The notes below the pieces were generated by a model. It did not search any database. It saw nothing but the letters and a program-made list of their open reading frames with translations, and was not told the DNA's origin. The position numbers and the translations under genes are program-made. Source: Diadema antillarum (taxonomy: Eukaryota). Taken from it: 64,000 bases of DNA. Shown one piece after another: positions 580 through 54,015 of the stretch. How positions within the stretch are numbered: position 1 is the first letter of the stretch; every line of letters starts with the position of its first letter. The stretch covers positions 1,612,001-1,676,000 of the forward strand of contig NW_027271598.1 in assembly GCF_040938485.1 (NCBI RefSeq), given 5' to 3'.

Positions 580-1080
580 CGTGGGAGGGGGACACCCACA
601 TCCTCCCACTCGCTCACTCTTATCGCTCTTGCTTGGCCGCGTTCATGATATTCAGTGTAAATATTAAAACAGGAAGTTTATTTGGATGATACTATTTTAC
701 GGGCAAATTGTTCATTAATAATCTACATCAAAATTTACTGCTACCTTAAACAAGTGGGACTGTTTCAAGTCGATAAAACAAGCAAAACATGCATCAAATT
801 GCACCATTTACAACATCAAAATGCAATTTCAGTTCTAAGAGTGGGAGGAGGGGGGGGGGGGGGACAACAGGTACTTCTACATCCTCCTCCTCCCCCCCCC
901 CCCCCAAAGATAAAATCCTAGCTACGCCGGTGCCCTTTCCCCGTTTGGTTTCCCTCAAAAAACAGTAAAAGTCTAGGGATTGAGAGCTTCCTATCATATT
1001 CCAAATGTCTGTCCAAAAAATCTCGTTACATTTTAGTGTCAAAACGCACCCCCCTTGAAAAAAAGCTGGTGACGCCCCTG
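580..1080. mobile_element. Right-end fragment of the CAG-ended DNA transposon family also present full length at 45439-48787 (copies at 13679-14184 and 33970-34471)
   Basis: Near-identical to 48286-48787. Ends in CTGGTGACGCCCCTG, the right TIR. It is followed by CTTAG here rather than TTATT, so this is a different insertion site. Confidence 0.85.
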
Positions 1081-1399
1081 CTTAGCCCTCCTTTATACGT
1101 TCTTTTCTTCTTTTTTTCCTCTTTCTCTCATTTCTTACCCCTGAGGGAAACAGTATATCATACCAACTTCACAATTGTCTAGATTCACTGGAAGAATGGT
1201 GCCTCCGAAGCTTTAGTAATGTTGAAACAAGAGTTGTATGTGATTTATATATAACTATATAGTTTTACAGATAATCGGTGTAAACGGGAGTCACTTGAAC
1301 CTGTAATTGTTGTTCTCTTTCCAATCCACATTATTGTTTTGTATACATGATTTCTCTCACTATTAGAGAGTGAGATGGGTTTATGTTATTGTCGAAAAA

Positions 1400-1865
1400 C
1401 GGAAATAAGTTTGATTTGAATTGATCTGAAAGTGAAAGTGGTTGACAGATATGGACAAATCTTCAGTGGACCAACAGACCGACACTTTCATGGTAGATCC
1501 ACGCAAATAAAATGTTAGATCTCACTGAAATCACCGGAGGCAAAAAAAAAAAAAAAAAAAATCATGTCGGGCACAAATGGAGGAACGCGTACAGAAAAGT
1601 CGTACCACCATTTTCTTCTGGAAACCATGGCAAAAGCAATTTAGAGAAGATATTCGAACTTTATTGAAATTCGTCTTTAGAAACCTGGAATATGCCGCAC
1701 GATGGAAGAAAAAAAAAATCTTGAGTACAGTAATAATCATAAGTGTTTCAGAAAATGGTGTCTATTTGGACACCCGTATTCTTGATGTGTATGGCAATAA
1801 TAAATGATGGTCTGAGTCACATTTCATTGCCTGTTTTTCAAAGTGCTTTGTTAGAAGTAGTATGA
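1400..1865 (+). pseudogene. Possible decayed coding relic of unknown family; a diverged second copy lies at 12870-13062 and continues at 49647-49705
   Basis: The two copies translate to similar peptides with stops and frameshifts: DRYGQIFSGPT/NRYEQFFSGPT, TLSW*IHANKMLDL/TLSWKIYANKIFDL, YHHFLLETM/YHHFLVETM, RRYSNFIEIRL*KPGIC/RSYSNFIEICL*KPGIC. Several differences are synonymous. Confidence 0.35.
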
Positions 1866-2119
1866 TGTATTATGTGTTTAGATAACGTATGTTGGATTTA
1901 GAATGATAAATATCCCACTGGGAAAAATGCACACACAAAAGAAGGACAAACACACAAACACACACATACAACATACATACACAAACATAGTGTGTAAACC
2001 ACCGTAGAGATGTAGAGAGAGAGAGAGGGGGGGGGGGGATGCTTTACAGCTTATTCCAGAATGTTATACCTTTCACAGAGAAGAAAGAACAGCAACCCAA
2101 TTTGGTAGATTGACATACG

Positions 2120-2275
2120 GGTCCTGTTGCATAAAATTTACTATTATGGTAACTTTGGCATCATGGTAACTTCCATGGAATTCTTGATTTTGATTGGCTG
2201 TTGAGTATTGTTGCCATGGTAGTTACAATTGGATGGCAAAGTTAACCATAATATTAATTTTTATGCAACATGCCC
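2120..2275. mobile_element. MITE with GG(T/G)C..GTTGCATAAAA termini (PIF/Harbinger-like); copies in units B (22455-22610) and C (~35520-35680)
   Basis: Terminal inverted repeats GGTCCTGTTGCATAAAATT and AATTTTTATGCAACATGCCC. Same terminus type as 46398-46592. Confidence 0.6.
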
Positions 2276-3963
2276 CAGATGTTATATATATTGTATTATA
2301 CAACACCTCAGAATGATGTCGAATTGTGATTGGCCAAGAACATGTCACATGACATTCAATAGAAAATACCTACCAAACTCATTGAGAGTGACAGCCATAC
2401 AATAGGCCCCTGGCATGGGCCTATTGCACGGCTCGAAGGTACTATAGCACGGCTTCGTGGGGGGCTACTAATGCATGGCCGCTCACAGAGTTCTGTGGCT
2501 CACAGCAGCAATAAAAGCGCCAGCAAACTACATTGTAGGGTGGAACATCCTATTACCGGACGCTTTTCTTTGTGGCTTTGAATTCCGTACTCATAGAATG
2601 AAATTTCGGCTAAAAACAACACCACTTATTCACAGACTCATGGAAATTACGAATTCAGCCAACTTACGTCATTTCTTCGTTCCAGTTTTTAGAAAATATG
2701 CTTCAAACATACCCCTCTAAAAATAGTGGTTTTTTGCGCCGTGCAAAATCGCATTGTATTACCGGACGCTATTTTCGTAATCGAATAATCGAGGTCTTTC
2801 GCACCTAATCCTTGCACCAGAATCACAATTCATCCCACAAATCACCGTACACATTCTCACCGAGCGGATGACACACACAAAAAATCTGCAAATGAAGCTC
2901 AAATTTCGTATTTTACAGTAAAATGTCTGTCTTGACCATTTCGAACAGTTCACGCAATAAAACCTTGTGAGAAATCGACAACTGGTTAGAGTATACGTGC
3001 TTTGTCTATGGGAGCTGCACGCGCGGGCGATGAGTTGCGTGCCCCTTGGCGCACAACTATTCCGCATCGTTCGCGTTTGAGGACGATAGCTACAAATTTC
3101 CGATATTGATCAGTGAACTTTTGGTTCTAATAGAATCTTCAGCATTTTTCCTGTATGTGAGTGGGATTTCATGGAATTTCAGTCGCGAAATGTGATTCAA
3201 ACATGCATAAATATTAACTATAAACGAGGTGCGGGTCACTCAACTATAAATTTGAGGTAAAATGTGAATTTTTTCGTGTTTTTACATTTTTATGTGGCGT
3301 TTTTTGCGATTTCGGTCCACACAAAGTTCTGTGAGGCTAATCTACGAAGTCTCGCGCGTACAGAATGTCATTAGTACGCAAAAATGTGCGTGTCCGGTAA
3401 TACCATGGTGTCCGGTGACACCATGCTTGCCCCTACGTGCTGGCCGGCTGCGCTGCGATGCGCTGCCGGTAAACAGACCAGTCGCGGCGGAGTACTGCAA
3501 CGTTAACGTGTACGCGCAGCTACTTTACCTAGCTAGTTGCATGTATTGCGGCCTACCTACTGCTGTGTTTTTAGTTTTGACTCTGATCTGCTATGTGGAC
3601 CACAGTGATCCCAAAATCAAGACTTCATTTGAAGTTGAGAAACCGTAATTTGATTATTTTTCTGTGTTTTTATACAAAATCATTTTCGGAAATAGAGAAA
3701 GTCTAGACCTACTACTAGATCTACCGACATCTCAGGTAGGCTTAACAGTCAGGCCTAACTCGATCTAACGTTAGCGTAGAATGGGTATAGACCCTGCGGA
3801 GTTTGTGATTCCTGTGACTGTGTGGTCGAATCATGACGAGTGTTTGAAGCAGTACACAGGGTGGTTTACAATTCTCGGCCTAATTGTTACATTTATTTTT
3901 GGGCCTTCCTGAGTTAGCGGTCACTAATTTAGTACTGTGATTGTGGACAAGGTGTTGTATAAA

Positions 3964-4139
3964 ACGAATAATTTATGATTTTGTTCGTGCATTGGGGCAC
4001 GTAATACCGCACTCGGCGCGAGATTCGCCACTGGTCTATTCAACGCGGCGCTACGCGCCTTGTTGAATAGACCAGTGGCTTATCTCGCGCCTCGTGCGAT
4101 ATTCGTGCCCTATGCACTCACAACTCATAAATTATTCGT
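3964..4139. repeat. Long palindromic (hairpin) repeat element, present in all three units
   Basis: Outer arms ACGAATAATTTATGA (3964-3978) and TCATAAATTATTCGT (4125-4139). Perfect 18-bp inner arms at 4027-4044 and 4062-4079. Confidence 0.8.
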
Positions 4140-5374
4140 ATAATATTGCAGTCCTTGAAATAAACACTGAAATTTGTTAACTTCCAAACATCACCTGGGA
4201 TGACTCAGTATTGGACATTCATTTTATACAGCATTGATAAGTGGCAATGTAATCACATTCTTTCTCTGTGATGTTTTTCATTAGGGCCTACTCAGTGATG
4301 GATATACAGTCTGTATTCATCTTCCAGATGATGTCATGGGCAAAATGGACCTTTATTTCTTCGCACTTTACTGCGGTTTTTTTTTAAATCTAAGACAAGA
4401 AATCAGTTTCCTCTAAACAATTTTGGGAACAGAATGTGTACTTTATAACATATTATATATATATATATATTTATTTATATATTCTCGTGGTGATCATATA
4501 CAATTTTCATAAACAAGTAAGATGTGTCAAACTTCAAAACATTTAATGACTTTAGGATTTTGACCGCAGGTAGTTAAGGAATCGACACAATTTCCAGGTG
4601 CAAGTTTGGATTCAGTCAAGCATGTATGAGATTAATTTTTTTTTTGACAAGTGTCAATTCTACATGTAGTGCTAATAACATGCTTCACAAAAAATAACAT
4701 ATTAGTAGTTTTTAAACATTGCAAAATGAACCCAAGGTAGTTTTTACATTTTGAATAGATACTAAATTATTCCTCTTCATCCATATCATCTTAAGATGCA
4801 GTTTGATCAGGTTTGATGTCTGTGACCTTGTCAGGGTTTCCTGGAGGAGGATCACATAATATATGAAATATATGAAATCAAATCATCAAATCAAAATCAC
4901 ATATAATCAAAACTTGTAGAAGCTAACCCTAGCACTCTTACTGTGCATACACATGCATACAGGGAGGGAGATAGAGAGAGAGAGAGAGAGAGAGAGACAA
5001 ATAAGAAAAGGAGATAGATCAATATATATATAGAGAGAGAGTGAAGGAGAGAGATAGAGCGAGAGGGAGTCCTTTACAGCACATTAAACAACACGTAAAG
5101 AGGAACACAATTTGTGATTGGGCCGATCTTTTATTCGAAGTCTCACAGACAACACAGAAATTGCTGATTTAGTAACATTCATACAGAATGTCTCAGTATT
5201 GATTATTTACATCTAGTTAAGGGTAGAGCTTATAATTGGGAGCAGCGATGTTCGAGTTATTACATTTGTTGCATAATTATGTGTAGGTCAGTTGCATCAC
5301 AAAACATCCTACTATATGAAATTTTTGCAAAAACCCCTAAAATATAAGGAGATATCACTATTTTTCTCACTTAA

Positions 5375-5446
5375 CCCGTTCCATGCCGAATTCTGAAATT
5401 CCCATAGATTTAATACACAGGCCACCAGGTTCCCGTAAGGAATGGG
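5375..5446. mobile_element. 72-bp piggyBac-type MITE, unique to unit A
   Basis: TTAA target duplication at 5371-5374 and 5447-5450. CCC...GGG termini with imperfect ~14-bp TIRs (CCCGTTCCATGCCG vs reverse complement CCCATTCCTTACGG). Units B and C have the empty site CTCACTTAACCATAAC. Confidence 0.85.
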
Positions 5447-7393
5447 TTAACCATAACTGTGGACGGTTTAGTCTAGAAACACTTTTATTATAACTGTTGT
5501 TCATATTTTGTATATCTAACATTAAACAATATGTAACATTGATTATCCTGATTAATTTTTTACATTAGTGGTTTCTATCCCTAACTCACATTTTAAAACT
5601 ATTTTGAAGCACTAAAGCTGAGTTTTTGTTTCATCTGCAGATGTGGTATAGGGCCTAAATAATGCCTTTAATGTATATCATGCACTCACGTCTTTTCTCT
5701 GCGCGTATGATGTACTCCATTTGCCAAGAATTGGCATATTTACCCTTTATCTACGTAATGTTATCATCAATTTATCTGCATCATACAAAAATGAAAGCAA
5801 TGGTAACTCTGAACTGATTTAAGACTGATTATCTCGGTTTGAATAATGCTGCAAACAAATTCCAAGAAACAAAACAAACAACCACAAATTGATTAAAACA
5901 TTCATTTCATGAAGTCAAGCTGTAAGTTTTCGTGATAATCGGATCGGCGACCTTGTGCCCATCTCCGCATGATCGCCATCGGATGGGACGTCGTCTAAAA
6001 ATCGAGACAATTTTGTTTGCAGCCTTTAATACGGTTTCTATAAAAAGCTTCCCTCTATACCATTTCCCCTTGTCTCCTCCATTCTCATCGCGCAGAGTAA
6101 TACATGAGCTTTGTTGACCCGCGGGCCGACGGCAGACTCGGGTCTCCATTCCATAAATCTCATTACAATGATTATTGTTATGTTACAATGATGGTTCTTT
6201 CAATGGCAGCAGTCATGCAGTAACCAATCAGATATGAGTATTCGGGTTATTCGTCATGGTAACTGCAATCACAGCAGCCTTTGATTATGGCAAACCCACC
6301 AGACTTCATTACAATGTCATGTATCAATTTCGCGCACCTATTATATTCGCCCAGGGATTTTCATAATTTCCCGTAGGTGCCTCCTACTAGAGCAACCTGT
6401 AGATTTTCGTTCTATCAAGGGGGTACTAGGCGAGTCTAGCACCTCACCCTACTTTCTGGTTGCCCTGTACGGAGTCCATGAGCAATGAGCAATCTAGACC
6501 CTTTTGACTGACATGTTGTAACATACACATCTAATAGCAGGCAACATTTTTTTTTTTATCATTTACAATGTTTTAAAGCTTACATACTGAGTCCATTCAG
6601 CTTTGTCACTATCTACAGCCTAATGTGCAGACAATTTTGTTTGATCCTCCTACATCCACTAATAAAGATTCCATTATTGGCAAATACCGTACATTTTAAA
6701 GTAAAAAGAGAGATATAAAGAGAGAATACATCAGGCACATGACTTCCACCAAGCTTTTCTCAACTTTTCTGCAGAAAAAAAAAGTAAGCTCATGCACATT
6801 TACACTTACATTTTCATGCCGTTGCGCAGACTACACATTTTGTATTTCGCACTTCACCCCTACACCTCGATTTCTATTAACCATGACGTACTACAAACAT
6901 GAGCCTTGTTTGATGAAACAACATACATGTACAATACAATTCAATACAATTGAATCATTTATATAGCGCTCTTACACGGTCAAGGAATGGTTTCACAGCA
7001 CTTCACAACAAAATTCAGTCACAGATTATTATTATAAAGGAATGACAATAAAAAAAGCTTTTGGTGTCACCATATTATTCATTAAACACAACACATTTCG
7101 ATCTTCAAGAATAATGGTTACATTTCATTCCATCATTATGATGATCTTTCCAGAAGGATCGATTGGCTGCCTCACAGAGAAGCACAGTTTCTGCTCTGTT
7201 TTCGGGGGGGGGGGGGGTGGAAAGAATAGTCTACTGCGCATGAATGCTTCATCTCATGCATTTAATTAGCCGTCGTTCATCTTGTTTATAAACAATGATT
7301 GATTCAAGAATTACTCATTACATGATTATTTTCTGAGACAAACCCTGCCCCTAAATAGAAGGTAAAAATGAAATGAAAAAAATGAAAACATTT

Positions 7394-10012
7394 TCACTTG
7401 TAAAGACCAGACAAAAAATCTTTGATGTAATCCCCAACTTCAATGGGCGAATCCTCCTGAATGAAATGCAGTCCAGCCGCATCAACAACTTTCTGATTGG
7501 GCCAGTGCTCAGTGGTTTTCTTGACGCTCGGGCCAAAGAGACCAGATAGGACATTGATGAACAACTTGGGGAGATTTGCAGACTCACTCAGCCAGGCGTA
7601 ATAAGCTGCAGCAGCTGCAATGACATCCTCGGGACCATCTCCAATGATGGGGATCTGCCTTGCAAACGTCAGGGTTGGGCGTCTGTCTTCTCCTGGGTTC
7701 TTGAAGGGCTCCACGTAGGCCTCCTTCTCCTCCTTCCTAAGCTCCCGCTTGATAAGGCGAGGCATGAGTACTTCCACAAAGGCATTCTTCTGGAGAACCA
7801 TCTCCTCCCCTTCGTCGGTGCGGAACACCTTGAAATCGGCATCGGGAAATTCCTCCCAACCGTGATAAGGAGCGACGAGGCTTTCAATGTGAACAAGGGC
7901 GTCCAGACGATCACGATGTTCATTGCTCCAATGGAAGCCCAGTATGGAGCCCCAGTCATGGCAAACGATGCTGATCTGTAGACAGAGAAAGCAGACTTAA
8001 ATGGAGCTACATGTAGTAGTTTTGGTTGAGACCTAACTTCAGGTTTCTAATATTTTTGGGTGAAATAATGAGAAATATCTAATGAAATATGAAAAGGCAT
8101 GTAATTCCGAGAGGGATTCAACGTTTATTTGATGGAAATCGGTTTTGAAATGGCTGAGATATCAACAACAAAAAAGAGCATTCCTAATAAAAAGCTGGAC
8201 CAATCTTTTATTCCTGGTCGGTTTGTTTTACTTTGTTTTTGGATGTTTCAGTCATTCCAAACCCGATTTTCATCAAATAAACTCTGAATTCCTCTGAAAA
8301 TGGTATGCTCTGTATACTATTTCGTAAGTGGTTTCTTGGTACCTCACAAAAAGTTGAAAGCCCAATTCTCATCTCCACCAACCCCTTTATTCAATTACAA
8401 CCTCAGTTAGCACATTTTAATTGCCCACCTTGCATTGCCAGTGGATTCTGTCTATTTTTCATCTGAAGTTGAAATAATGACGGACAACTTCGTTTACATT
8501 TTCATTAATTTTAACTCTTAACCCACAAGCACGAATATTCTCATTGTCCTAACACGAATAAGAGTTATTTCATACAATAAGGATAATTCTTTCAGTATTT
8601 TTTTCCACATATTTATCTGAATCAGATCTTTTTCTTTCCAGTTTCTTCATCACCTCTCTGGTTAAGGCACAATTTATTCTAGACCAGAAATAACTAGATT
8701 TGTTTTAGCTCATTTTTGCAAAACACTTCTCGGGAACAGTTCTCGAACAGTAAATATGCATATATGCAAATGTATGAGATCGCGATGTCATCACCTCAAA
8801 GTTTTCTTCTGCTTATGTGCAAAACAAACAACTTCAAAATAGCCCTACTTGATATTATATATACATTTCCATAATAATATGGTTATGAATGAGTTGATGA
8901 TTTCATGGCCTCAAAACTATAATAGTGATCAGTAAGAAATATAAATATAATTTTGAATAAAACAAGCTGGAATCAGTTCTTGTCTACAAAATATGTGACA
9001 AGTTTTGAGGCCATGAAATCATCAACTCATTCATTTCCATATTCATATTGACTATTCGAGAACTTTACTTGTGTAAATCTGTGAAAATTCAGAATACTGT
9101 GAATTTCCTAATTTCATTTCCTGTTGATCAAATTTTCAGTTGTGCCCTTAAAGCTTATCTATTTCTTTTCAGACATGCTATTCTGAGCTGTATTATGAAC
9201 TGGTAACTCAAAAAAGGCAAGAGGTATAATGAACTCACAAAAAGATGCATAAACAAGTAAGATCTCTAACATGTGTAGGGAGCTACTGTTTGTGATAACA
9301 CAAGAGTAGGAATTCACACAGTGAACGACAATTTTTTTAAACAAGATATATTAGGGTAAAGGATACAAAAATTAACATATTTATCGTAGTAAGTGCTTTG
9401 AGCCATGGTTTATGTATTACGATATAGTGCCGATTTTACATTATAATATACGTACTACTACAGTACTTACAATCTCAGCTTCGGGGAGGATCAACCGCCT
9501 AACTCACACATTAACGAAAGCTAACAAAGAACGAGAGAGAAAATATTATGGAAAAAACGAAACAGCATTTTGAAGAAAAAAAAATCACGTTAGTGCTCAC
9601 TGTTCATTTGTGTTTAAAAAAGTAACCAAACATTCCCTTAAGGAGGCCTACACACCTTTTTAGGCAGGTTAAGCTTGTCAAACCAGGCAGACAGGAATCT
9701 ATAGTGATCGACGAAGCGATACGACAGGCTTGCGAGCTTGTTGGATCTGCCCATGCCGATTAGGTCGGGAGCTAGACAACGAGCAATAGGCTGAACTTGA
9801 GGTACGACGTTCCTCCAGAGGTACGACGAGGTCGGGTTCCCGTGGAGAAACACGACTGCTCGATCACTATCGCGCTGATCGGGGTCGGAGTCGTAGTACG
9901 ACATCTGTTCTCCCAAGACGTCCAATTTTTTGCATTTCCCCCACCATTCGTCTGCTGTCACTATTGGTACTGTGGACTGTTGCTGTGCTGGCGCTCCGTC
10001 TGAGGAAGACAT
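7394..10012 (-). CDS. Renilla luciferase-like / haloalkane dehalogenase (coelenterazine 2-monooxygenase-like), copy A; exon 1 10012-9656, exon 2 7975-7394; 312 aa
   Basis: Motifs [32 protein letters not shown] (nucleophile Asp plus halide-binding Trp), VHIES (catalytic Glu) and [10 protein letters not shown] (catalytic His). Phase-0 GT-AG intron 7976-9655 (AAG|GTGTGT ... TCTACAG|ATC). No stops or frameshifts. Confidence 0.95.
8001..8390. mobile_element. Degenerate Kolobok-like (TTAA-flanked) element in the intron of genes A-C, same family as 50899-51280 in opposite orientation
   Basis: Similar to the reverse complement of 50899-51280 (e.g. TAGTTTTGGTTGAGACCTAA and CAAAAAGTTGAAAGCCCAATTCTCATCTCCAC). 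TTAA at 7997-8000. Confidence 0.55.
8666..9147. mobile_element. TTAA-flanked non-autonomous element (Kolobok-like) in the intron of genes A-C
   Basis: TTAA|GGCACAA ... TTGTGCCC|TTAA, with TTAA at 8662-8665 and 9148-9151. Confidence 0.5.
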
Positions 10013-11351
10013 GTCTGACGTAACATTTAAAACGTATGAAAATTGAACGAAAATTGTCAACTTTTCGTGTGTAAGACGATGGTTTGTCGTTAGGATGTAG
10101 ATGTGATTTTGTGTCCTCCACCTGCGCTCATAGATCAGTCGCATCCCTTGCCTGGTGTACTAATGTTCCCTGGCCTCTGAGAGCGGAAGGGGTTATTTTG
10201 TTCCACCAAGCATAATATGTGAATTACAAGCTTAAATAGTCCGAGAAAGCCCGTTATACGAGTGCATCGTTGCGCGACAGCGTGTACCCTGGGCATCCCA
10301 AGTTTAATGGAGCGGCCATCCAGGTATCATGTTTAATCTAAAAAGTAAAAAAAAAAAAAAGTAAGCCATGTAACATTATTCACTTCTCAAAAGATGATTC
10401 AGGGAAATGTTTGTTAGCTGATTTTTTAAGCCCCTGGAAGAAAAGTCTTTCATTCCCAGACTGCAGAATCTGCTGCTGTAGTAGGTCTACTGCTCATCCT
10501 TGCTGATCTTTAGTTGTTGTTTTTTCCAACATTATCAGTAACTTTGTGATTTTCTGTAAGTACTAGTGGCAACATTGTCATTAATGTCATCCTTATTATA
10601 TCCTGGGGGGGGGGGGGGGAGTAGTCGTCCTTCAGTCTATAATAATCTATTCAATTTCATCCCGATTCAAGTCAAGAGTTCTCATTATCCGACTTCACTT
10701 TAAAGTAAATCTATAACGGCCTTCATGAACTTTACGCCTATATGGCATATTTTGGGCAAGACTCTTTAGCCGTCTCACGTAGGGCTTCAATAATTTTATG
10801 TCCCTGATTACGGGCTTTACTTTTTATTTGATTTTCCACTTTGATTCAGGTTGTCCATTTAAAAGAATATTCCAGCGCCAGAGCATTGTCAGGTACCCAT
10901 CACCATGAAAATACAGTGATATGAAAATGCTTGCGTATCAATAAGCTATCATCTGAGAAAGACCCATCAAATCAACCCAAGGAGACATGATTATAATGGG
11001 AGTGGTCGACAAGGCTTCAGGAGTTGTTGGTCAAAGAGATGGATCCCATACTAATGAGGCCCCAACAAGTAAAATGACATTCGGTTCTCCTACAAGAATA
11101 CTACAGCATAGATAGGCCTACATTATCTACATACTCTCCACTTCGTTGAGATCGGAAACATCAGAATCGTATATCATTCAAGAAATACTGTCACGGAGGC
11201 TGTTACTTATCTTTTAAAATCCCCTCCCCGTTCATCCTCAGTAACGACCAGCTCAGTGACTTGAAGAACAGCGAGATGTTCGTTGGCCGGCAAAGTAGTT
11301 GACACCTGTTCGATGGATGTTTTGTTTGGTTTTGGTGTTCTTGTTTTTTGA

Positions 11352-13064: not shown

Positions 13065-13678
13065 AAACCCCCGGTCGCAAAGCGCTTTACGGCTTATGCA
13101 CGGCCAAAACACGTCAAAAAGTGGTCTCCCGTGAAGCAGACGATGTTGTTCGCGTTGATGTTAAGTTTAAGGCGAGCTACGGTAGATTTATAGACTGGCA
13201 GGACGCGGGGAAAATTCTGAACAGCGTCGGACGCGGTAAAAAGTTTTGATCTGCTCAAAATTTTATTCCGCGGACAACCACGGGAGGCACACGTGGTAAA
13301 GACGTGCAACACACGTGAAACACACGTGATGATCCGTGTTCCGGCAGTGATTAAAACTTGGGGAGACGCGGTAAAGACGCGAAAGTTTAGCGATCTGTCA
13401 CGGGCAGAGCACGGTCATCTGACTCCTGTTACGCGTTGGTATCACGGGAAATAGCGTGTGTTTAGCGGCTTATCGCTGACAAATGGATTTTTCCGCGTAC
13501 ACACACGTGGCTGGACGTGGTCAGCCGTGCCTAGGTAGTGCTTCAGCAGTGGAACAGTCGCCAACGGCCATACCCCGTATAAAGCACGACCAAACTAAAA
13601 TTGACCAAAAACTTACCACTTACTACCACGTCCACCAAATTTTCATAACTTTTTGTACGTGATTTGGACGTGGAGTGC
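13065..13678. mobile_element. MITE lacking the last ~16 bp of its right end, truncated by the unit junction (also 33353-33969); intact copy at 49015-49644
   Basis: Left end AAACCCCCGGTCGCAAAGCGC after TA. Identical to 49015-49628 up to GGAGTGC, then switches to the CAG-element fragment. Confidence 0.8.
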
Positions 13679-43327: not shown

Positions 43328-45500
43328 GTCTGACGTAACATTTAAAACGTATGAAAATTGAACGAAAATTGTCAACTTTTCGTGTGTAAGACGATGGTTT
43401 GTCGTTAGGATGTAGATGTGATTTTGTGTCCTCCACCTGCGCTCATAGATCAGTCGCATCCCTTGCCTGGTGTACTAATGTTCCCTGGCCTCTGAGAGCG
43501 GAAGGGGTTAGTTTTGTTCCACCAAGCATAATATGTGAATTACAAGCTTAAATAGTCCGAGAAAGCCCGTTATACGAGTGCATCGTTGCGCGACAGCGTA
43601 CTATACCCTGGGCATCCCAAGTTTAATGGAGCGGCCATCCAGGTATCATGTTTAATCTAAAAAGTAAAAAAAAAAAGTAAGCCATGTAACATTATTCACT
43701 TCTCAAAAGATGATTCAGGGAAATGTTTGTTAGCTGATTTTTTAAGCCCCTGGGAGAAAAGTCTTTCATTCCCTGACTGCAGAATCTGCTGCTGTAGTAG
43801 GTCTACTGCTCATCCTTGCTGATCTTTAGTTGTTGTTTTTTCCAACATTATCAGTAACTTTGTGATTTTCTGTAAGTACTAGTGGCAACATTGTCATTAA
43901 TGTCATCCTTATTATATCCTGGGGGGGGGGGGGGGGGGGAGTAGTCGTCCTTCAGTCTATAATAATCTATTCAATTTCATCCCGATTCAAGTCAAGAGTT
44001 CTCATTATCCGACTTCACTTTAAAGTAAATCTATAACGGCCTTCATGAACTTTACGCCTATATGGCATATTTTGGGCAAGACTCTTTACCGTCTCACGTA
44101 GGGCTTCAATAATTTTATGTCCCTGATTACGGGCTTTACTTTTTATTTGATTTTCCACTTTGATTCAGGTTGTCCATTTAAAAGAATATTCCAGCGCCAG
44201 AGCATTGTCAGGTACCCATCACCATGAAAATACAGTGATATGAAAATGCTTGCGTATCAATAGGCTATCATCTGAGAAAGACCCATCAAATCAACCCAAG
44301 GAGACATGATTATAATGGGAGTGGTCGACAAGGCTTCAGGAGTTGTTGGTCAAAGAGATGGATCCCATACTAATGAGGCCCCAACAAGTAAAATGACATT
44401 CGGTTCTCCTACAAGAATACTACAGCATAGATAGGCCTACATTATCTACATACTCTCCACTTCGTTGACCTTGATTTTTTGACCTACATCGTACATTTTG
44501 CTACAAAATGCTACTTCCGGCGGGGACATTATATTACGCACCACGTAATTTCTACTTTCCTTATTGTTTTTTATTTGTTTTTTGTTTTTGTGTTTGTTTT
44601 TTTGCAACGATTTCCTGGTTTGAAGCAGCAAACACTGTTTTCGCACATACCATCGACACAAACGAAGGTACATGCAGTGATCTTTGCTGAGAGGCTGCCT
44701 GTTTTGGGACTTTCCAGGGTTGCGTGCATGACCCGAGGAGCTCGGGGCGTTCTTTCTCTCGGTACGAGGGCAAAGGCCAACCGTAGGCACCAGGCACGTT
44801 TGGTTACCATTGCATTGTGTCAGACCAGGGATGTGAGACCAAAGTTCTGTGGGGGAGACACCTCCCTGGTATGACGCACCAACCTGCACACCAATTTGCA
44901 CGAAAGCCATACACCTCCCTGACCTGACCTCCTCCTCAACTCTAAACCGTCAGAGTATTATAGAGTACGGCATCTTTTTATTAACTCTCCTCACACCGAC
45001 TGACCTCCCTTGCCTGCAGAGGTTCATATCATCAGCAAAAGGCAATCCAGAAGCTCTAAATATTCCAGTCTTTTCAATAGAATTCTCGATAGTCATTTCA
45101 GTTGAAATAAATGTGCATGTTTACTACAGAGGGCCATGAGACAGCGGCTGATGAGACTGGATAACTTCTGAAAATAGCATCGCCAAGATCGTGCACACTT
45201 TAATGGCTGAGTAGAGCATCATTACTACTTCAATTTATTCTAGCTGAGATGTTAGATCCTGAAATCTTTCATAATGATTCGATTAAGCTGGCTGGCTACA
45301 TTATTGATAGGTTGCTAGGAGTGATAAATCTCAGTGAGAGTACGTGCGCGCTCAAATAAACAGCAGTTACACAGCAAAAGTGTTGCTTCAAAATGGCAAA
45401 TCATTCTCGTGAGTGTGATCTTGTGTGATACAATTATTCATGGGCGTCACCAGGGGGGGGGGGGGGTGCGTTGGGTGCGAACGCACCCCCCTTCAGATCC

Positions 45501-45531
<31 letters not shown>

Positions 45532-46397
45532 TTCAGTCTGCAAGCGACCTCAACGCCGGACGCTAAATGATTATTCTTTTCTATTTTGTTTTTAATTTTG
45601 CACCAGGGACATAAAAAAAAAAATCGTGGGCAAAAACAATTCGCACCCCTAGTTCTGGCAGCACTTATTTCATACATATCTACTAGTATTCTATACAGTG
45701 TTTACTATGTATCGACCGTACTGTACATCCGTACAGTACGGAACACGTACACGTTTGCATGTTCGTGTGCTACTTACAAGTATGTAGGGTCTATGTAGGT
45801 TACTTCTGACCAATCCATATTGCCAGCCCAAGAGCGAGCCCTAAATTAGCCTCATAAAAAAAAAGAATGGAGGGGCAAGCATATCATTTTGCCCCCCCCC
45901 CCCTCCATAATTCCAGAGATGAGAAGATTTTCTTACCTTTTATTTGACAGAAAAAAAAAGTTGCCCCCATAAAAATATTGGAGGGGCAAGCATAATTATT
46001 ATAATTTCGCCCCCCCATAATTAATAATTCCCGAAATGAGAAGATTTTCTTGCTTTTGAAAGAAAAAAAAATGTTGCCCCCATAAGAAATATTGGAAGGC
46101 AATTGCACCATTTGCCCCACCCCACATGCTCATAATTCCCGCGATGAAAAGATTTTCTTGCTTTTTTGTTAGAAATCTGTCCAATTATTTCACCCAAATG
46201 CAGTGGCGTAACTACGGGGAGGGGGGGAGGCGGGAGGGGGAGGGGAGGGGGGGGGGAGGGGGGAGGGGGGGTAAGAAAATCATCTAAGGTAAGAAAATCT
46301 TCTATGATTTCTTTTAACCATGAAATAGGTGTATAGTGTGAAACATTGTTCAAAAAGCCCGGAGCCGACAAAAGATTGTGATTCAGCGTGATTCCTG

Positions 46398-46592
46398 GGG
46401 CCCGTTGCATAAAACTCCAACCAGATTTTTTTTTTCCGGTTGAAATCACAAAATTCCGGTTGGAAGCTCCCAACCAGAGTTTTTATGCAACGGATTTTAC
46501 ATTCTTAGGTTAGCAACCTTAAAAAATTCAGGTTGGGCAAATCCCAACCTGAATTTTCTAAGGTTGCTAAAAAAGTTTTATGCAATGGGACC
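46398..46592. mobile_element. PIF/Harbinger-like MITE nested in the composite element
   Basis: TIRs GGGCCCGTTGCATAAAACT and AGTTTTATGCAATGGGACC. CTG target duplication at 46395-46397 and 46593-46595. Confidence 0.7.
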
Positions 46593-47029
46593 CTGGTTGG
46601 CATCCTGCAAAGCAGTATGTGCGCAGTGTGTACTCAGAATATCCGAACGGCAAAAAGAGTCGCTACAATGTTGCACAATGTGATGTAGAATTTACACCTT
46701 TGTACCTTACGCTTCGTTATATCAAAGCTAGATCATTGATTTTGCAGTGTTGCTTTACATATTTATAGTCTATATAAAAATGTCTTGCATTGCCAATAAA
46801 AAGACTTGACCTTTATGGGCTAATTCCTAACTTTTCCATGTATATAATACACACACACAAACAAACACTCACAATTAGGGGATGCTCTAAAGTGCAGATT
46901 TTGGACATCCTTCCCCCGCTTGGTCACTTCGACGCCACCTCGCTGGTTATACCTCCCCCAGTCATGAACATAAACCGACACCCTTGACTACCAGTGGCGG
47001 ATCCAGGGGGGGGGGGGGGTGCACCGGGC

Positions 47030-48200
47030 GTCCCCCCCCCCCCTCACAATTTCCAAAGCGAAAAAATATAGCTTCAAATGGCAGTTTTTGTCCGCTCGCT
47101 CGCATTTAGTCGTATAATGCCATTGAAGTTGCTGCCAGTAATTGCCGGCAGTTGCACCCGGTGCGCCCCCCCCCCCCCCTCAATTTCCAAAGCAAAAAAA
47201 TATAACTACAAACGGCAGTTTGGGGACTGTAAAATAACACAATTTTCAAGCTCGCTCGCTACCGCTCTCGCATTTAAATTCTCCTGATATTGCTGCCAGT
47301 AATTGCCAGCAGTTGCGCCCGGTGCGCCCCCCCCCCCTTAATTTCGAAAGCAAAAAAAGACATAGCTTCAAACGGCAGTTTTTGGACTGTAAAATGTCAA
47401 AATTTTCGAGCTCGCTCGCATTTCAAATCTTTATGCAATTCTTCTGATGTTACTGGCAGTAAATGTCAGCAGTTGCGCCCGGTGCGCCCCCCCCCCTTAA
47501 TTTCCAAAGCGAAAAAATATAGCTACAAACGGCATTTTTTTTTACTGTAAAATGTCAAAATTTTCAAGCTCGCTCTCTTCGCTCGCTCGCATTTAATCGT
47601 TTTGCAATTCACCTGATGTTGCTGCCAGTAATTGCCAGCAGTTCCGCCCGGTGCGCCCCCCCCCCCTTAATTTCCAAAGCGAAAAGATATGGCTAAGAAC
47701 GGCAGTTTTTGGACTGTGAAATGTAAGATTTTCAAGCTCGCTCGCTCGCATTAATAATAATCGTTATGCTCTCCTGATATTGCTGCCAGTAATTGCCAGC
47801 AGTTGCGGTCGATGCGGCCCCCCCCCCTTAAATTCCAAAGCGAAAATATATAGCTAAAAACGTCATTTTTTTTTTTTTTACTGTGATGTGTTAAAATTTT
47901 CCAGCTCGCTCGCTACGCTCGCTCGCATTTAATTGTTATGCCATTCTCCTGATGTTGCTGCCAGTTATTGCCGGCAGTTGCGCCCGGTGCGCCCCCCTTT
48001 ATTTCCAAAGCGAAAAAAATATGTCTCCAAATGGCAGTTTTGGGACTGTAAAATGTCAAACTTTTCAAGCTCGCTCTCTTCGCTCGCTCGCATTTAATTG
48101 TTATGCCATTCACCCGATGTTGCTGCCAGTAATTACCAGCAGTTGCACCCGGTGCGCCCCCCCCCCCCCTAATTTCCAAAGCAAAAAAAAAAAAAAAAAA
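47030..48200. repeat. ~165-bp minisatellite, about 7 units
   Basis: Recurring GCAGTTGCGCCCGGTGCGCCCCCC anchors at ~47150, 47310, 47470, 47640, 47800, 47975 and 48140, with homologous sequence between them. Confidence 0.85.
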
Positions 48201-49014
48201 TGACTGTTTCAAGTCGATAAAACATGCAAAAAACTTGCATCAAATTATTTACTATTTACAACATCAAAATGCAAAAAGTGCTCACCGTGGGAGGGGGACA
48301 CCCACATCCTCCCACTAGCTCACTCTTATCGCTCTTGCTTGGCCGCGTTCATGATATTCAGTGTAAATATTAAAACAGGAAGTTTATTTGGATGATACTA
48401 TTTTACGGGCAAATTGTTCATTAATAATCTACATCAAAATTTACTGCTACCTTAAACAAGTGGGACTGTTTCAAGTCGATAAAACAAGCAAAACATGCAT
48501 CAAATTGCACCATTTACAACATCAAAATGCAATTTCAGTTCTAAGAGTGGGAGGAGGGGGGGGGGGACAACAGGTACTTCTACATCCTCCTCCTCCCCCC
48601 CCCCCCCCCCAAAGATAAAATCCTAGCTACGCCGGGGTGCCCTTTCCCCGCTTGGTTTCCCTAAAAAAACAGTAAAAGTCTAGGGATTGAGAGCTTCCTA
48701 TCATATTCCAAATGTCTGTCCAAAAAATCTCGTTACATTTTAGTGTCAAAACGCACCCCCCTTGAAAAAAAGCTGGTGACGCCCCTGTTATTGCACTGCT
48801 AAGCAACGAAACTCAAGTAGGTAACAGATATGAACAATTCTTCAGTGGACCAACAATAAAAGGAAACCGACTGACACTTTCATGGAAGATCTACGCAAAT
48901 AAAATATTCGATCTCAATGAAACCCTGGACCCAAATATTTTCATGAAGGGCACACGGGAAAAACGCGTACCTTTCCGTCGTATACCATCATTTTCTTGTA
49001 GAAACCATGGTGTA

Positions 49015-49644
49015 AAACCCCCGGTCGCAAAGCGCTTTACGGCTTATGCACGGCCAAAACACGTCAAAAAGTGGTCTCCCGTGAAGCAGACGATGTTGTT
49101 CGCGTTGATGTTAAGTTTAAGGCGAGCTACGGTAGATTTATAGACTGGCAGGACGCGGGGAAAATTCTGAACAGCGTCGGACGCGGTAAAAAGTTTTGAT
49201 CTGCTCAAAATTTTATTCCGCGGACAACCACGGGAGGCACACGTGGTAAAGACGTGCAACACACGTGAAACACACGTGATGATCCGTGTTCCGGCAGTGA
49301 TTAAAACTTGGGGAGACGCGGTAAAGACGCGAAAGTTTAGCGATCTGTCACGGGCAGAGCACGGTCATCTGACTCCTGTTACGCGTTGGTATCACGGGAA
49401 ATAGCGTGTGTTTAGCGGCTTATCGCTGACAAATGGATTTTTCCGCGTACACACACGTGGCTGGACGTGGTCAGCCGTGCCTAGGAAGTGCTTCAGCAGT
49501 GGAACAGTCGCCAACGGCCATACCCCGTATAAAGCACGACCAAACCAAAATTGACCAAAAACTTACCACTTACTACCACGTCCACCAAATTTTCATAACT
49601 TTTTGTACGTGATTTGGACGTGGAGTGCTGTGTGACCGGGGCTT
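49015..49644. mobile_element. Intact ~630-bp TA-flanked MITE
   Basis: Imperfect TIRs AAACCCCCGGTCGCAAAGCGCT vs reverse complement AAGCCCCGGTCACACAGCACT. TA on both sides (49013-49014, 49645-49646). The flanks rejoin into sequence homologous to 1620-1700. Confidence 0.75.
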
Positions 49645-50898: not shown

Positions 50899-51280
50899 AG
50901 GGATAGTACAGTATTTGTGGAGATGAGAATTGGGCTTTTAACTTTTTGCGAGATACCAAGAAAACACTTATGATATAGTACAGAGCATACCATTTTAAGA
51001 GGAATTCAAAGTTTATTTGATGAAAATCGGGTTTGGAATGACTGTAACATCCAAAAACAAAGTGAAACAAAGGGATCGCAATAAAGTGTGGGTCCCACAC
51101 TTTATTACAATCGCTCTTTTTTGGATATCTCAGCCATTTCAAAACCAATTTTCATCAAATAAACGTTGAATTCCTCATAGAAGTACATGCTCTTTCATAT
51201 TTCATAAGAGGCTTCTCATTATCTCACCAAAAGATGTTAGAAACCTGAAATTAGGTCTCAACCAAAACTATACAATCCCT
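50899..51280. mobile_element. Kolobok-like non-autonomous DNA transposon (382 bp)
   Basis: TTAA duplications at 50895-50898 and 51281-51284. TIRs AGGGATAGTACAGTATTTG vs reverse complement AGGGATTGTATAGTTTTG. Confidence 0.75.
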
Positions 51281-51726
51281 TTAACACAATGATGTACTCT
51301 GATGGGCTACCAACAATACACAAGAAGCGAGAAGTAAAATTCGCCATCGCAGGGAGCGAGGTGGGGTGACGATTGGGGTGGGGGGGGGGATGGGGGTGAG
51401 GTCTGCGTTTGGGTAAAAATCTTATTACTTCGGCCGTAAACACAAACAGGTCAGGTTCTGATCAAGGATTGGTATCGTTTCTTCTCGAATGGGAGCGTGA
51501 GATACTGTAAAATGTAAATGCTCGAGTCTCATGGTCAATAAGTGACAGTCATGCTGAGGCTGGAATAGGCCTACAATTTACATATATCTGTAAGTTTGTT
51601 CATTTTTTTTAAGGAATATCTGCAATTAGATTCTGACTGTGTACGGCAAAGCATTAGAATACAAGGCAATTTGGTATGACATCTTGCCACATTCGACTAG
51701 TCCTCATTACTTCATACAACTGTGAT

Positions 51727-54015
51727 TTACTTGTACAGTTCCGTAAGGAATGTCTTTATGTAATCCCCGATTTCTATCGGGGAATCCTCTTGAACGAAGT
51801 GCAACCCTTCGCATTCTACTATCTTTTGATTCGGCCACTCTTGGACCATCTTCTCGAAGACCGGGCTCAGCACGCCCGGCTTGACGCTGATGTAGAGCTT
51901 AGGTAGATCGGCTGACTTCGTCTTGAACCAGTCGGCGTAGGCAGCCACGATGGCGATCATATCGTCCGGTCCATCGCCGACGACGGGAATCAACCTTGGC
52001 CAGGTGAGCGTCGGTTGCCTGTCGTCCGGATCCCTGAATGGTCCCCGGTAGGCCTCCATCTCCTCCTCGCTCATCTTGCGCATGACGCCGAGTGGTAAGA
52101 ACTGCTCCACGAACACGTTTCCCTCTCGGATAAGTTTCTCCCCAGCCACGCCAGCCCGAAGCGCCTGGAGTGGTTCTCGCCCGATGTCAGGGAAAGTATC
52201 CCAACCGGGAATGGGACCCACGAAACTCTCCATGTGGACCAGGCCTTCCATGCGATCTCCGTGTTCGCTGGACCAGTGTAGTCCTAGTCCGGAACCCCAG
52301 TCATGGCACACAATGCTAACCTGTGGGAAGAAAGAATGAATTGAATATCGAGTATTTTTTACATTACATTGCAGTGAAACGAAATCCACTGTACTATAGC
52401 GTCAATGTGTAGAGCTTCTTTAAACGAACTCCCACCCTCCCTCATTATCATGATGTATCTTCTATATAACACGAGAGAAAACTAATACACGCAAGAAAAA
52501 TCCAAACAAAAAGTGACTTACAGGCCAAAGAGATTAAAGTTATTGTAAAAGCAAACCACATGTATTGACTAAAGACATGAATAGTTACCGTCTGTATAAA
52601 CTGCGTCATTATGTACATAAACGTTTTGAAAACATCTCACAGAGGTAACTGTCATTTTGCATCATGTCACGTGATCGGGAGTGTTAATTCTGGCGCAAGT
52701 TGCTGGGATCAAATTTTAACATGACTGGAGGTAGGCCTACATCAAGGATCTAAATGTTCATTGAATCCCCTGAAGCAAAGCAAGTCTCTGTACTCATAGG
52801 TGCTATAACGTAAATCGAAGAAGTAACGTCGCACTCACAGTCATGATAATTTTCTCTGCTTGTACGTCCTTGATAGGACATACTGCATGAGAATTGTGTG
52901 AAAGGGGCATCCATTTTCTGTAGATATTCATTACTTTCTCAAGAGCACCAGATATACCATCATTAAAGCGAAATCTGAATTCGGAGTTAGAGAGCGAAGT
53001 TCTTAAATCAACAGGTCATCTACTGAGACGTCCTAGGTTCTTCATTATAGACTGAAGTATTCAGGCCTATCGATTATAATACTATGGGCGAGCTCGTTTC
53101 GTATGTAGCAATTTCCTTCAGTGGCCTTCATTACGCCGGCTTCTTATTCGAAAAAAAAACACGAATACCCAGCATTTCATAACAATGTACATCACACCAT
53201 TACTACATGCACTACTACTTCTACTATCACTACTACTACTTTAACTACTACTACTACAACTACCTCTACTACTACAAGTGCTACTACCTCTGTATTAGTA
53301 TAATCTTCTCCCGTTTTTCTATTTTCATTGTAACTATTCCCTCTCCTACTAATATTGCGATTGCAAGTAACTGGCATTAGTTCTTGCTTTGTTAATGGAT
53401 ATCATTATAACCACCACATTATAGTGTGAACGATCAAAACAAAAAAAGTTAGACACAGAAATATACAGATATAGATGCAGAAAAAGAGTGAAAAGGAGAA
53501 ATAATGGCAATAAGGACAAAGAAAGCTTTCTATCTCTTTGCTTTTTACCGATTATTTCTTGTCGAGATGATAGGAATAAATCGAAAGTTTTCTGCAGCTT
53601 AAATCACCTTCGCAGGAAGACTGACTGCGTCAAACCATGCTGAGAGGTAGCGGTAGTGATCCAGAAAGTGGTAAGCCTTGTTGGCAAGCTTGCTGGATCG
53701 CCCGTGCCCGACTAGGTCTGGAGCGAGGCAGCGAGCAACGGGCTCGACCCGGGGAATCACGTTCCTCCAGAGGTACGACGAGGTCGGGTTCCCATGCAGG
53801 AAGACCACAGCGTGATCGCTGCCGCGTTGCTCGGGGTCCGAGTCGTAGTACGACATCGTCTCCCCCAGCACGTTGACCTTGCCGCATTTCTCCCACCATT
53901 GTGACGCCGTAATCAACGGTATCGTCGACTGGCTCCGGCGAGTCCCAACGACGAAGCTGACTGGACGTGATATGAGAAAGAGTCGGCCGCATGTGTTCCT
54001 TAAAAGGCATGCCAT
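51727..54015 (-). CDS. Divergent Renilla luciferase-like / haloalkane dehalogenase paralogue D; exon 1 54015-53608, exon 2 52320-51727; 333 aa with N-terminal extension
   Basis: Motifs [28 protein letters not shown] and GLHFVQEDSP. Phase-0 GT-AG intron (AAG|GTGATT ... CCCACAG|GTT) at the same position as in A-C. The first ATG is at 54015; the ORF track start at 54090 is a TTG. Confidence 0.93.
53195..53300. repeat. Imperfect (ACT)n microsatellite in the intron of gene D
   Basis: Run of ACT/CTA triplets with interruptions. Confidence 0.8.

What the first reader, a model, noticed from the sequence alone, without database searches (positions are those of the whole stretch)
580..54015. Recent tandem amplification of a Renilla-luciferase-like/haloalkane dehalogenase gene beside an old paralogue
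Three intact copies encode an apparently identical 312-aa enzyme, followed by a much more divergent fourth gene with the same intron position, so duplication happened on two time-scales. Established: this fold includes bacterial haloalkane dehalogenases and Renilla luciferase, and echinoderms have tandem luciferase-like genes, including non-luminous species. Inference: recent dosage amplification of one paralogue points to selection or copy-number variation in handling halogenated compounds or coelenterazine-like substrates.
Basis: partly seen in the sequence, partly recalled or inferred. Interest (0 to 1): 0.75.

Follow-up and report, generated by a model that had tools for sequence, protein, structure and literature searches.

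The report
Copy-variable luciferase-like dehalogenase array, Diadema
In the sea urchin Diadema antillarum a 13-kb block carrying a Renilla-luciferase-like haloalkane dehalogenase gene has very recently been repeated in tandem, with three intact genes on one chromosome copy and two on the other; this is a real but fairly ordinary example of a gene-family expansion already known from echinoderms.

Summary
On the minus strand, three two-exon genes (A, B, C) encode one identical 312-aa protein. A fourth gene (D, 333 aa) has its intron at the same place.

The window is Diadema antillarum contig C710, and my models equal the RefSeq proteins.

- The cluster has eight such genes per haplotype, and all share that intron.
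- The assembly keeps both haplotypes. The partner contig C1011 has two intact A-type genes plus a third unit whose gene was removed by an 8.95-kb deletion. Copy-number variation is therefore seen within one animal.
- The five units differ by 0.2-0.8% in substitutions, about as much as alleles do, so none is an assembly duplicate. All junctions are the same transposon-to-transposon joint.
- The five coding sequences differ at 3 sites, all synonymous, against 42 of 3133 non-coding sites. This points to purifying selection.
- The amplified gene is an older, faster-evolving Diadema paralogue (dS about 0.4 to its siblings). It lacks the basic N-terminal extension of all other paralogues, and I found no counterpart in the D. 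setosum cluster.

The fold and catalytic pentad are intact. A cytosolic dehalogenase-type hydrolase is the likeliest function.

Other notes of this scan on this window touch the same genes.

The parts
62..583 (.). Last 522 bp of the leftmost copy of junction segment Y (Y0). Its first 327 bp lie just left of the window, separated by a 570-bp insertion. The high-identity array begins about 1.35 kb left of the window.
579..13677 (-). Repeat unit 1 (13.1 kb): element X 579-1084, gene A, 142-bp minisatellite 11467-11877, segment Y 12838-13682
7394..10012 (-). Gene A: exon 1 10012-9656, intron of 1680 bp, exon 2 7975-7394 (stop included). 312 aa, identical to protein P0001 (XP_071504255 / XP_071509971).
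13678..33968 (-). Repeat unit 2 (20.3 kb, or 13.05 kb without the transposon): X 13678-14188, gene B, Y 33125-33973
14682..21920 (.). 7.2-kb insertion with terminal inverted repeats and no ORF over 105 aa (non-autonomous DNA transposon). Present only in unit 2 of this haplotype, so it arrived after the duplication.
27675..30299 (-). Gene B: exon 1 30299-29943, intron of 1686 bp, exon 2 28256-27675. Same 312-aa protein. One synonymous difference (CDS nt 345), shared with the second copy on the other haplotype.
33969..49632 (-). Repeat unit 3 plus the closing copy of Y (48788-49632): X 33969-34467, gene C. It lacks the 720 bp that hold the minisatellite.
40707..43327 (-). Gene C: exon 1 43327-42971, intron of 1682 bp, exon 2 41288-40707. 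Coding DNA identical to A. On the other haplotype the stretch equal to 34467-43418 is missing, which removes this gene.
45439..48787 (.). 3.35-kb insertion private to this haplotype: 2.85 kb with a roughly 155-bp tandem repeat (47093-48187), followed by another copy of element X (48285-48790)
51727..54015 (-). Gene D: exon 1 54015-53608, intron of 1287 bp, exon 2 52320-51727. 333 aa, identical to P0241 (XP_071504256). It has a 27-residue basic N-terminal extension and an orthologue in D. setosum (P0128).

Best explanation
This is the distal half of an eight-gene tandem family of HLD-II (Renilla-luciferase-like) alpha/beta-hydrolase genes in Diadema antillarum.

One member, the A-type, is an older Diadema paralogue. 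It has lost the basic N-terminal extension carried by all its relatives and has evolved 2-4 times faster than they have. It sits in a 13-kb unit that was very recently multiplied head to tail. All internal junctions are the same joint between two dispersed repeats. The copies therefore descend from one founding junction and were multiplied by unequal crossing-over between units (inferred).

The array is copy-number polymorphic. One haplotype of the sequenced male has three intact genes. The other has two, plus a third unit whose gene was deleted. The protein has been kept unchanged in all five copies while non-coding DNA drifted, so the copies are functional genes under purifying selection.

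The product most likely is a cytosolic haloalkane-dehalogenase-type hydrolase with an altered cap and tunnel, not a luciferase (inferred). Whether extra copies are favoured for dosage is open.
For: Structure of the array.

Identity of the genes with RefSeq models.

Both haplotypes are in the assembly. PMC13511894 reports 1.75 Gb, 84.4% duplicated BUSCOs, 2.52% heterozygosity and one sperm donor. C710 and C1011 are colinear over more than 120 kb, with 0.08-1.78% substitutions.

Gene counts are 3 versus 2 intact, with an 8.95-kb deletion in the third unit of C1011.

Five distinct units exist in one diploid. The smallest pairwise difference is 0.19%, against an assembly error of about 1 per 28 kb.

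Copy B of both haplotypes shares three derived sites, so the duplication is older than the split between the two haplotypes.

Purifying selection: 3 of 939 coding sites vary, all synonymous, against 42 of 3133 non-coding sites (Fisher p = 0.007).

Junction repeats: Y holds a roughly 620-bp dispersed repeat, and X is a complete roughly 505-bp element with thousands of candidate copies.

Age and rate:
- dS between A and G2-G5 is 0.40-0.45, against 0.15-0.17 between D. antillarum and D. setosum orthologues.
- The ML tree puts A inside the Diadema G2-G5 clade (support 100/100) on a stem of 0.29.
- The relative-rate test gives 41-42 versus 11-12 unique changes against G2 (p about 3e-5).

Enzyme:
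- Matches to solved structures: E = 1.7e-131 to AncHLD-RLuc, 3e-100 to RLuc, 6e-73 to LinB.
- The model has pLDDT 88.7, with TM 0.91-0.97 to RLuc-type structures and 0.87-0.92 to LinB.
- N59, D126, W127, E150 and H289 are invariant in the alignment.
- The sea urchin homologue DspA dehalogenates and gives no light with coelenterazine (Fortova 2013, as cited in PMC5413902).
Against: - No read-level check of the contig was possible, and HiFi reads averaged only 6.8 kb against 13-kb units.
- No transcript evidence was obtained here. RefSeq gives the three identical genes three different models (356, 276 and 312 aa), which suggests weak evidence for the 5' end.
- Cytosolic location and dehalogenase activity are inferred from sequence only.
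- The A-type carries replacements at positions conserved from bacteria to echinoderms (M149I next to the catalytic Glu, A174E, W223F, P224A, P263S) and a 3-residue deletion in the cap loop. Its substrate range could therefore differ much from DspA.
- The mechanism of the very first duplication is not resolved.
Confidence: 0.72

Rival explanations
1. Assembly artefact: the three copies on C710 are a false tandem duplication, for example alleles of the two haplotypes strung together, and the true number is one or two per haplotype.
For: The assembly is an uncollapsed hifiasm draft at about 11x per haplotype with 6.8-kb mean reads. Units are 13 kb and over 99% alike. Read depth could not be checked.
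Against: - All five gene-bearing units on the two contigs differ from each other by 0.19-0.78%, far above the consensus error. One diploid male therefore carries five different units, which needs at least three on one haplotype.
- Units carry private structural marks: the 7.2-kb transposon, the 3.35-kb insertion and a 720-bp deletion.
- The second contig independently shows two intact units plus the two ends of a third.
- There are no gaps in the window.
Confidence: 0.06
2. Old duplicates kept alike: the copies are ancient and only look recent because gene conversion keeps homogenising them.
For: - Divergence between units (0.2-0.8%) is no larger than between alleles (0.08-1.78%).
- Orthology by position is blurred: unit 1 of C710 is closest to unit 2 of C1011.
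- An older, 74%-alike partial copy of the unit's end lies left of the array.
Against: - Identity runs through the whole 13 kb, including introns, intergenic DNA and the same transposon copies, with one identical junction. Conversion tracts are usually much shorter (own knowledge).
- No A-type gene stands in the D. setosum cluster, so no array is shown to be old.
Confidence: 0.12
3. Adaptive dosage amplification: extra copies are favoured because the enzyme detoxifies halogenated algal metabolites in this grazing urchin.
For: - Purifying selection acts on all copies.
- The pentad is intact.
- DspA is an active dehalogenase.
- D. antillarum is a reef herbivore.
- The A-type has changed at cap and tunnel positions.
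Against: - There is no expression, activity or population data.
- One haplotype has lost a copy by deletion.
- The neighbouring G3-G5 genes also differ in number between haplotypes (2 versus 3). Copy change may therefore simply reflect an unstable repeat-rich cluster.
Confidence: 0.15
4. The amplified gene is a coelenterazine-using oxygenase (luciferase-like) rather than a dehalogenase.
For: - It is closest in sequence and fold to RLuc-type structures: 48% identity to RLuc, about 60% to engineered ancestral luciferases.
- Brittle-star homologues evolved luciferase activity (PMC12059646).
- The changes lie in the cap loop region, which is the part exchanged in the engineered 'fragment transplantation' luciferases listed.
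Against: - No luminous sea urchin is known (own knowledge).
- DspA and a sea-star homologue give no light with coelenterazine.
- The halide-binding Asn and Trp are kept.
Confidence: 0.05

Closest known systems
DspA of Strongylocentrotus purpuratus (XP_794172; Fortova et al. 2013, cited in PMC5413902)
   Same: It is an echinoid HLD-II enzyme of about 308 aa without the N-terminal extension, and it shares the Trp-to-Phe change in the TLTWPR motif. It belongs to a group of near-identical genes within a cluster of at least 60 kb on one chromosome.
   Different: It is not the orthologue. DspA sits in a separate echinoid clade. The Diadema A-type arose inside the Diadema G2-G5 clade, has its own set of replacements and a 3-residue cap deletion, and has not been assayed.
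Renilla luciferase (RLuc) and the reconstructed AncHLD-RLuc
   Same: They share the fold (TM 0.91-0.97), the catalytic Asp-Glu-His and the Asn/Trp pair. Identity is 48% to RLuc and about 60% to the ancestor.
   Different: The host is a non-luminous animal, no luciferase activity is shown, and the cap loop is shortened.
Tandem luciferase-like gene arrays of Amphiura filiformis (PMC11310086; AfLuc and DafA in PMC12059646)
   Same: The same gene family is expanded by tandem duplication in an echinoderm.
   Different: Here the expansion is within-species young (under 1% divergence) and differs between the two haplotypes of one animal. The species is not luminous.
Bacterial HLD-II dehalogenases (LinB, DhaA, DmbA)
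   Same: They share the pentad and the fold (TM 0.87-0.92, 42-44% identity).
   Different: This is an animal gene with a spliceosomal intron, a family-wide N-terminal extension in its paralogues, and tandem genomic organisation.

Membership tests
Haloalkane dehalogenase subfamily HLD-II (including Renilla-luciferase-like proteins) | Alpha/beta-hydrolase core with a helical cap domain | tested here: met
   Pfam Abhydrolase_1 matches both exons. The AlphaFold model has pLDDT 88.7 and pTM 0.89. TM is 0.91-0.97 to AncHLD-RLuc and RLuc, and 0.87-0.92 to LinB.
Haloalkane dehalogenase subfamily HLD-II (including Renilla-luciferase-like proteins) | Catalytic pentad of HLD-II type: nucleophile Asp, base His, acid Glu after strand 6, and halide-stabilising Asn and Trp | tested here: met
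   N59, D126, W127, E150 and H289 of the 312-aa protein fall in invariant columns of an 18-sequence alignment that includes a bacterial HLD, an engineered ancestral luciferase (AncFT7) and echinoderm homologues. That these columns are the pentad rests on my own knowledge of RLuc N53/D120/W121/E144/H285.
Haloalkane dehalogenase subfamily HLD-II (including Renilla-luciferase-like proteins) | Hydrolytic dehalogenation of haloalkanes | not testable with these tools
   This needs recombinant enzyme. The only assayed urchin homologue (DspA) is active.
Coelenterazine luciferase of Renilla type | Light emission with coelenterazine | not testable with these tools
   No assay was possible. Non-luminous echinoderm homologues tested by others gave no light.
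Recent tandem segmental duplication with copy-number polymorphism | Head-to-tail units of high identity with the same junction | tested here: met
   There are three units, 0.2-0.8% substitutions apart. Every internal junction is Y (ending in a 620-bp dispersed repeat) abutting X (a 505-bp dispersed element).
Recent tandem segmental duplication with copy-number polymorphism | Different copy number on homologous chromosomes | tested here: met
   C710 has 3 intact genes. C1011 has 2 intact genes plus a unit with an 8.95-kb deletion. The assembly is documented to retain both haplotypes.
Recent tandem segmental duplication with copy-number polymorphism | Support from read depth or junction-spanning reads | not tested
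Expressed functional gene copies | Transcripts of copies A-C | not tested
   No run on record as RNA held the stretch. Indirect support: 0 non-synonymous changes among five copies.

The most novel reading that the evidence does not exclude
The amplified A-type gene is a neofunctionalised, cytosolic offshoot of an otherwise organelle-targeted dehalogenase family. D. antillarum kept it and D. setosum lost it. Its remodelled cap and tunnel give it a new substrate range, for instance dietary algal organohalogens. Its copy number is a segregating polymorphism under dosage selection. This parallels the independent, extension-less and amplified DspA group of S. purpuratus.
Probability: 0.15. Interest if true: 0.6.

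Novelty: new member of a known kind. Interest (0 to 1): 0.35.

Why it matters
Animal haloalkane dehalogenases are rare and of unknown physiological role, and they are the raw material from which luciferases evolved at least twice. This locus offers a natural experiment. A lineage-specific paralogue has lost its N-terminal extension and changed residues conserved since bacteria. It is now present in different numbers on the two chromosomes of a single keystone reef grazer.

The locus gives concrete handles for later work:
- copy-specific variants for expression studies;
- a deletion allele;
- a sister species that has no such gene in this cluster.

With these one can ask what the enzymes do in animals and whether dosage matters. 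It is also a practical warning for users of the uncollapsed D. antillarum assembly: gene counts there mix paralogues with alleles.

Tried and rejected
- **Read evidence.** No depth, junction or splice evidence was obtained. Local whole-unit alignments in scripts ran across them, and no conclusion rests on those 44 bases.
- **Paper searches.** Searches for expression of these genes in urchins found nothing. No divergence date is given in the genome paper.
- **Other ORFs.** Pfam scans of other ORFs in the units, the insertions and the right end of the window gave no family.
- **Positional orthology with D. setosum.** I tried to resolve it from non-coding matches. The matches are partly repeats, and their order is not simply colinear with the D. 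antillarum cluster. I claim only that no A-type gene is present in the 45.6 kb read, and that one exon-1 fragment is.
- **The 356-aa RefSeq isoform.** I reject it as the real product. Its extra 44 residues come from DNA unrelated to the extension-coding DNA of the paralogues and are closed by a stop in copy B.
- **Enrichment in the cap domain.** A-specific replacements are only weakly enriched there (24 of 85 against 40 of 215, p = 0.08). I make no claim from this.
- **Searches left out.** The big representative search, the complex prediction and the atlas were not needed.
Full report
**What is in the window**

A self-comparison shows three head-to-tail repeat units at 579-13677, 13678-33968 and 33969-49632, with no assembly gaps. 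Each unit holds a two-exon gene on the minus strand. The introns are GT/AG, in phase 0, and 1680-1686 bp long. Each gene has a 939-nt coding sequence giving the same 312-aa protein. A and C are identical in coding DNA, and B differs by one synonymous base.

A fourth gene, D (54015-51727, 333 aa), has its intron at the same codon boundary. It is 53% identical to A in exon 2 and 71% in exon 1.

**How the spliced models were searched**

The joined 312-aa protein was never typed. One search returned a database protein (P0001) that is identical to the spliced model, so later full-length steps used that identifier. Joined coding sequences were built only inside local scripts, for lengths and substitution counts.

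**Organism and annotation**

Exon 2 finds a 100% identical protein named 'coelenterazine h 2-monooxygenase-like [Diadema antillarum]'. All of my models equal RefSeq proteins residue for residue.

RefSeq gives the three identical genes three different products, of 356, 276 and 312 aa. The 44 extra residues of the 356-aa form come from DNA unrelated to the paralogues' 5' coding DNA. In copy B that stretch is closed by a stop. I take 312 aa as the real product.

**The wider locus**

The window is C710:1612001-1676000. A whole-genome search finds eight genes of this family in a row on C710. Four more (G1-G4) lie left of the window. A parallel row stands on contig C1011. All sixteen genes are intact, have two exons and share the same intron position. 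So do the two D. setosum genes I rebuilt. The shared intron is therefore a family trait.

**Two haplotypes**

The published description of this assembly states that the 1.75-Gb version retains both haplotypes of one male. It reports 84.4% duplicated BUSCOs, 2.52% heterozygosity, a k-mer haploid estimate of about 0.70 Gb and phased haplotypes of about 0.9 Gb each (PMC13511894).

C710 and C1011 are colinear over more than 120 kb, with 0.08-1.78% substitutions in single-copy blocks. I read them as the two haplotypes.

C710 has three A-type genes. C1011 has two, plus a third unit that keeps its two ends. That unit lacks the 8.95 kb equal to window 34467-43418, which removes the gene and 91 bp upstream of its ATG. 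Further differences between the haplotypes:
- The 7.2-kb insertion with terminal inverted repeats (14682-21920) and the 3.35-kb insertion (45439-48787) exist only on C710.
- C1011 has an extra G-type gene (G5) in a 20.9-kb insertion.

**Is the duplication real?**

I could not lay reads. However, the five gene-bearing units of the two contigs all differ from one another by 0.19-0.78% over 4.5 kb. That is about fifty times or more the reported consensus error. One diploid animal with five different units must carry at least three on one chromosome.

Copy B of both haplotypes shares three derived sites, including the synonymous coding change. The two-copy state therefore predates the split of these haplotypes.

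**How the array was made**

Each internal junction is the same. Segment Y ends in a dispersed repeat of about 620 bp, which has at least 452 candidate copies at 92-94% identity. Y abuts element X, a complete dispersed element of about 505 bp with at least 2627 candidates, many at 95-99% identity.

Y also closes the array on the right, and it opens the array on the left. The high-identity block starts about 1.35 kb left of the window. One shared junction means one founding event, followed by unequal exchange between units. This is inference. The first event itself is not resolved.

**Age**

Unit-to-unit substitution divergence is 0.2-0.8%, within the range of allelic divergence here. It is 20-80 times smaller than synonymous divergence between D. 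antillarum and D. setosum orthologues, which is 0.15-0.17.

From memory, and unchecked, that species split is of the order of 10 million years. On that figure the amplification is on the order of 0.1-0.5 million years old, or is being continually renewed.

**Constraint**

Among the five copies, 3 of 939 coding sites vary and all three are synonymous. Among non-coding sites, 42 of 3133 vary (Fisher p = 0.007, binomial p = 0.001).

At the non-coding rate, roughly nine or ten non-synonymous differences would be expected. None is seen. The copies are being kept functional.

**What the amplified gene is**

In a maximum-likelihood tree, the A-type falls inside a Diadema-only clade with G2-G5 and their D. 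setosum orthologues (support 100/100). Its stem is 0.29 changes per site, against 0.01-0.04 for its siblings.

Relative-rate tests give 41-42 A-specific changes against 11-12 for G2 (p about 3e-5). Against G3-G5 the counts are 32-33 and 16-21.

Synonymous divergence from G2-G5 is 0.40-0.45, with dN/dS of 0.31-0.38. The A lineage is therefore older than the species split. Yet no D. setosum protein groups with it. The 45.6 kb of the D. setosum cluster that I read holds the D orthologue, two G-type genes and one exon-1 fragment, and no A-type gene. Loss in D. setosum is the simplest reading. The rest of that genome could not be searched.

**N-terminus**

Every other paralogue carries 27-43 extra N-terminal residues. 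This is also true of most other urchin homologues compared. These extensions hold 5-8 basic residues and, except in G1, no acidic ones.

The A-type has only ten residues before the conserved core, and none of them is basic. The DNA upstream of its ATG is unrelated to the extension-coding DNA of G2-G5.

That the extension is an organelle (probably mitochondrial) targeting signal, and that A is therefore cytosolic, is inference from composition only.

**Enzyme**

Fold and family are not in doubt:
- Matches to solved structures are E = 1.7e-131 to AncHLD-RLuc, 3e-100 to RLuc and 6e-73 to LinB.
- The model has pLDDT 88.7, with TM 0.91-0.97 to RLuc-type structures and 0.87-0.92 to LinB.
- The pentad residues sit in invariant columns.

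The A-type differs from all six G-type sequences at 64 positions. Four of these (M149I, A174E, P224A, P263S) are positions where all 17 other aligned sequences agree. W223F is a position where 16 of the 17 agree. The A-type also has a 3-residue deletion in the cap loop, where model confidence dips.

The one assayed urchin homologue, DspA, is a dehalogenase that gives no light with coelenterazine. Brittle-star relatives include both a luciferase and a dehalogenase. I therefore favour a dehalogenase-type hydrolase with a shifted substrate range.

**Comparison with what is known**

Tandem expansion of this family in echinoderms is published. In S. purpuratus the family also lies in one chromosomal cluster.

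What is new here is of modest scale:
- a within-species-young amplification;
- copy-number difference between the two haplotypes of one animal;
- the particular nature of the amplified paralogue.

The neighbouring G3-G5 genes also differ in number between the haplotypes. The cluster as a whole therefore looks unstable, and dosage selection on the A-type remains a hypothesis.

**Limits**

- No read depth and no RNA evidence were obtained.
- Localisation and activity are untested.

Three first-reader notes of this scan lie on the same window. I checked the junction note and partly checked the other two.

Noticed in passing
C710:1568567-1603200, left of the window (loci L017-L021); C1011:1669715-1722500 (L023-L028): Four more intact family members (G1-G4; 341-346 aa) precede the window. 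G3, G4 and G5 form a second young sub-array (dS 0.03-0.06) that also differs in number between the haplotypes: 2 on C710 and 3 on C1011, where the extra G5 sits in a 20.9-kb insertion.
   Followed up: partly
window 14682-21920: A 7.2-kb element with terminal inverted repeats (CACTGCAAAAA... / ...TTTTTGCAGTG), subterminal GGTGTTAAA-like repeats and no ORF over 105 aa. It is present only in unit 2 of C710 and replaces 7 bp of the empty site.
   Followed up: partly
window 579-1084, 13678-14188, 33969-34467, 48285-48790: Element X is a complete dispersed repeat of about 505 bp. It has at least 2627 candidate copies in the genome, many 95-99% identical, so it is probably a young non-autonomous mobile element.
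   Followed up: partly
window 47093-48187 and 62213-63054: Two minisatellite-like arrays with units of roughly 155-165 bp, about 80% alike. Related repeats occur on C1011 at other places in the cluster.
   Followed up: no
window 11467-11877 (and the same place in unit 2): A 142-bp tandem repeat (2.9 copies) lies 1.5 kb upstream of gene A. Unit 3 lacks this stretch through a 720-bp deletion.
   Followed up: no
window 8012-8381, 28293-28661, 41325-41695 versus 50914-51274: A 370-bp stretch in the intron of A, B and C recurs, inverted and 85% alike, just downstream of gene D. Related copies are also in the D. setosum cluster. It is probably a transposon fragment.
   Followed up: no
window 52321-53607 versus C1011 (locus L033): The intron of gene D is 1287 bp on C710 but 2717 bp on C1011, which carries a 1.43-kb insertion. 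The D protein is identical on both.
   Followed up: no
D. setosum OZ188196.1, about 34,020,680-34,020,830 (loci L037/L038): An isolated exon-1 fragment of a family member (about 30 codons, 63% identical to A and 75% to G1 at DNA level) lies between the two G-type genes of D. setosum. It is a remnant of a lost cluster member.
   Followed up: partly
S. purpuratus proteins P0258, P0261 (DspA), P0257, P0260; loci L039, L040: The DspA group of S. purpuratus parallels the Diadema A-type. It has near-identical multiple genes, a long stem in the tree, 308-aa forms without the N-terminal extension, and the same Trp-to-Phe change in the TLTWPR motif.
   Followed up: partly
locus L036 1-8244 (D. setosum): In D. 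setosum an ASC-family sodium-channel gene (PF00858) lies divergently next to the D orthologue. The matching side of the window (54-64 kb) gave no Pfam match for its longer ORFs.
   Followed up: partly
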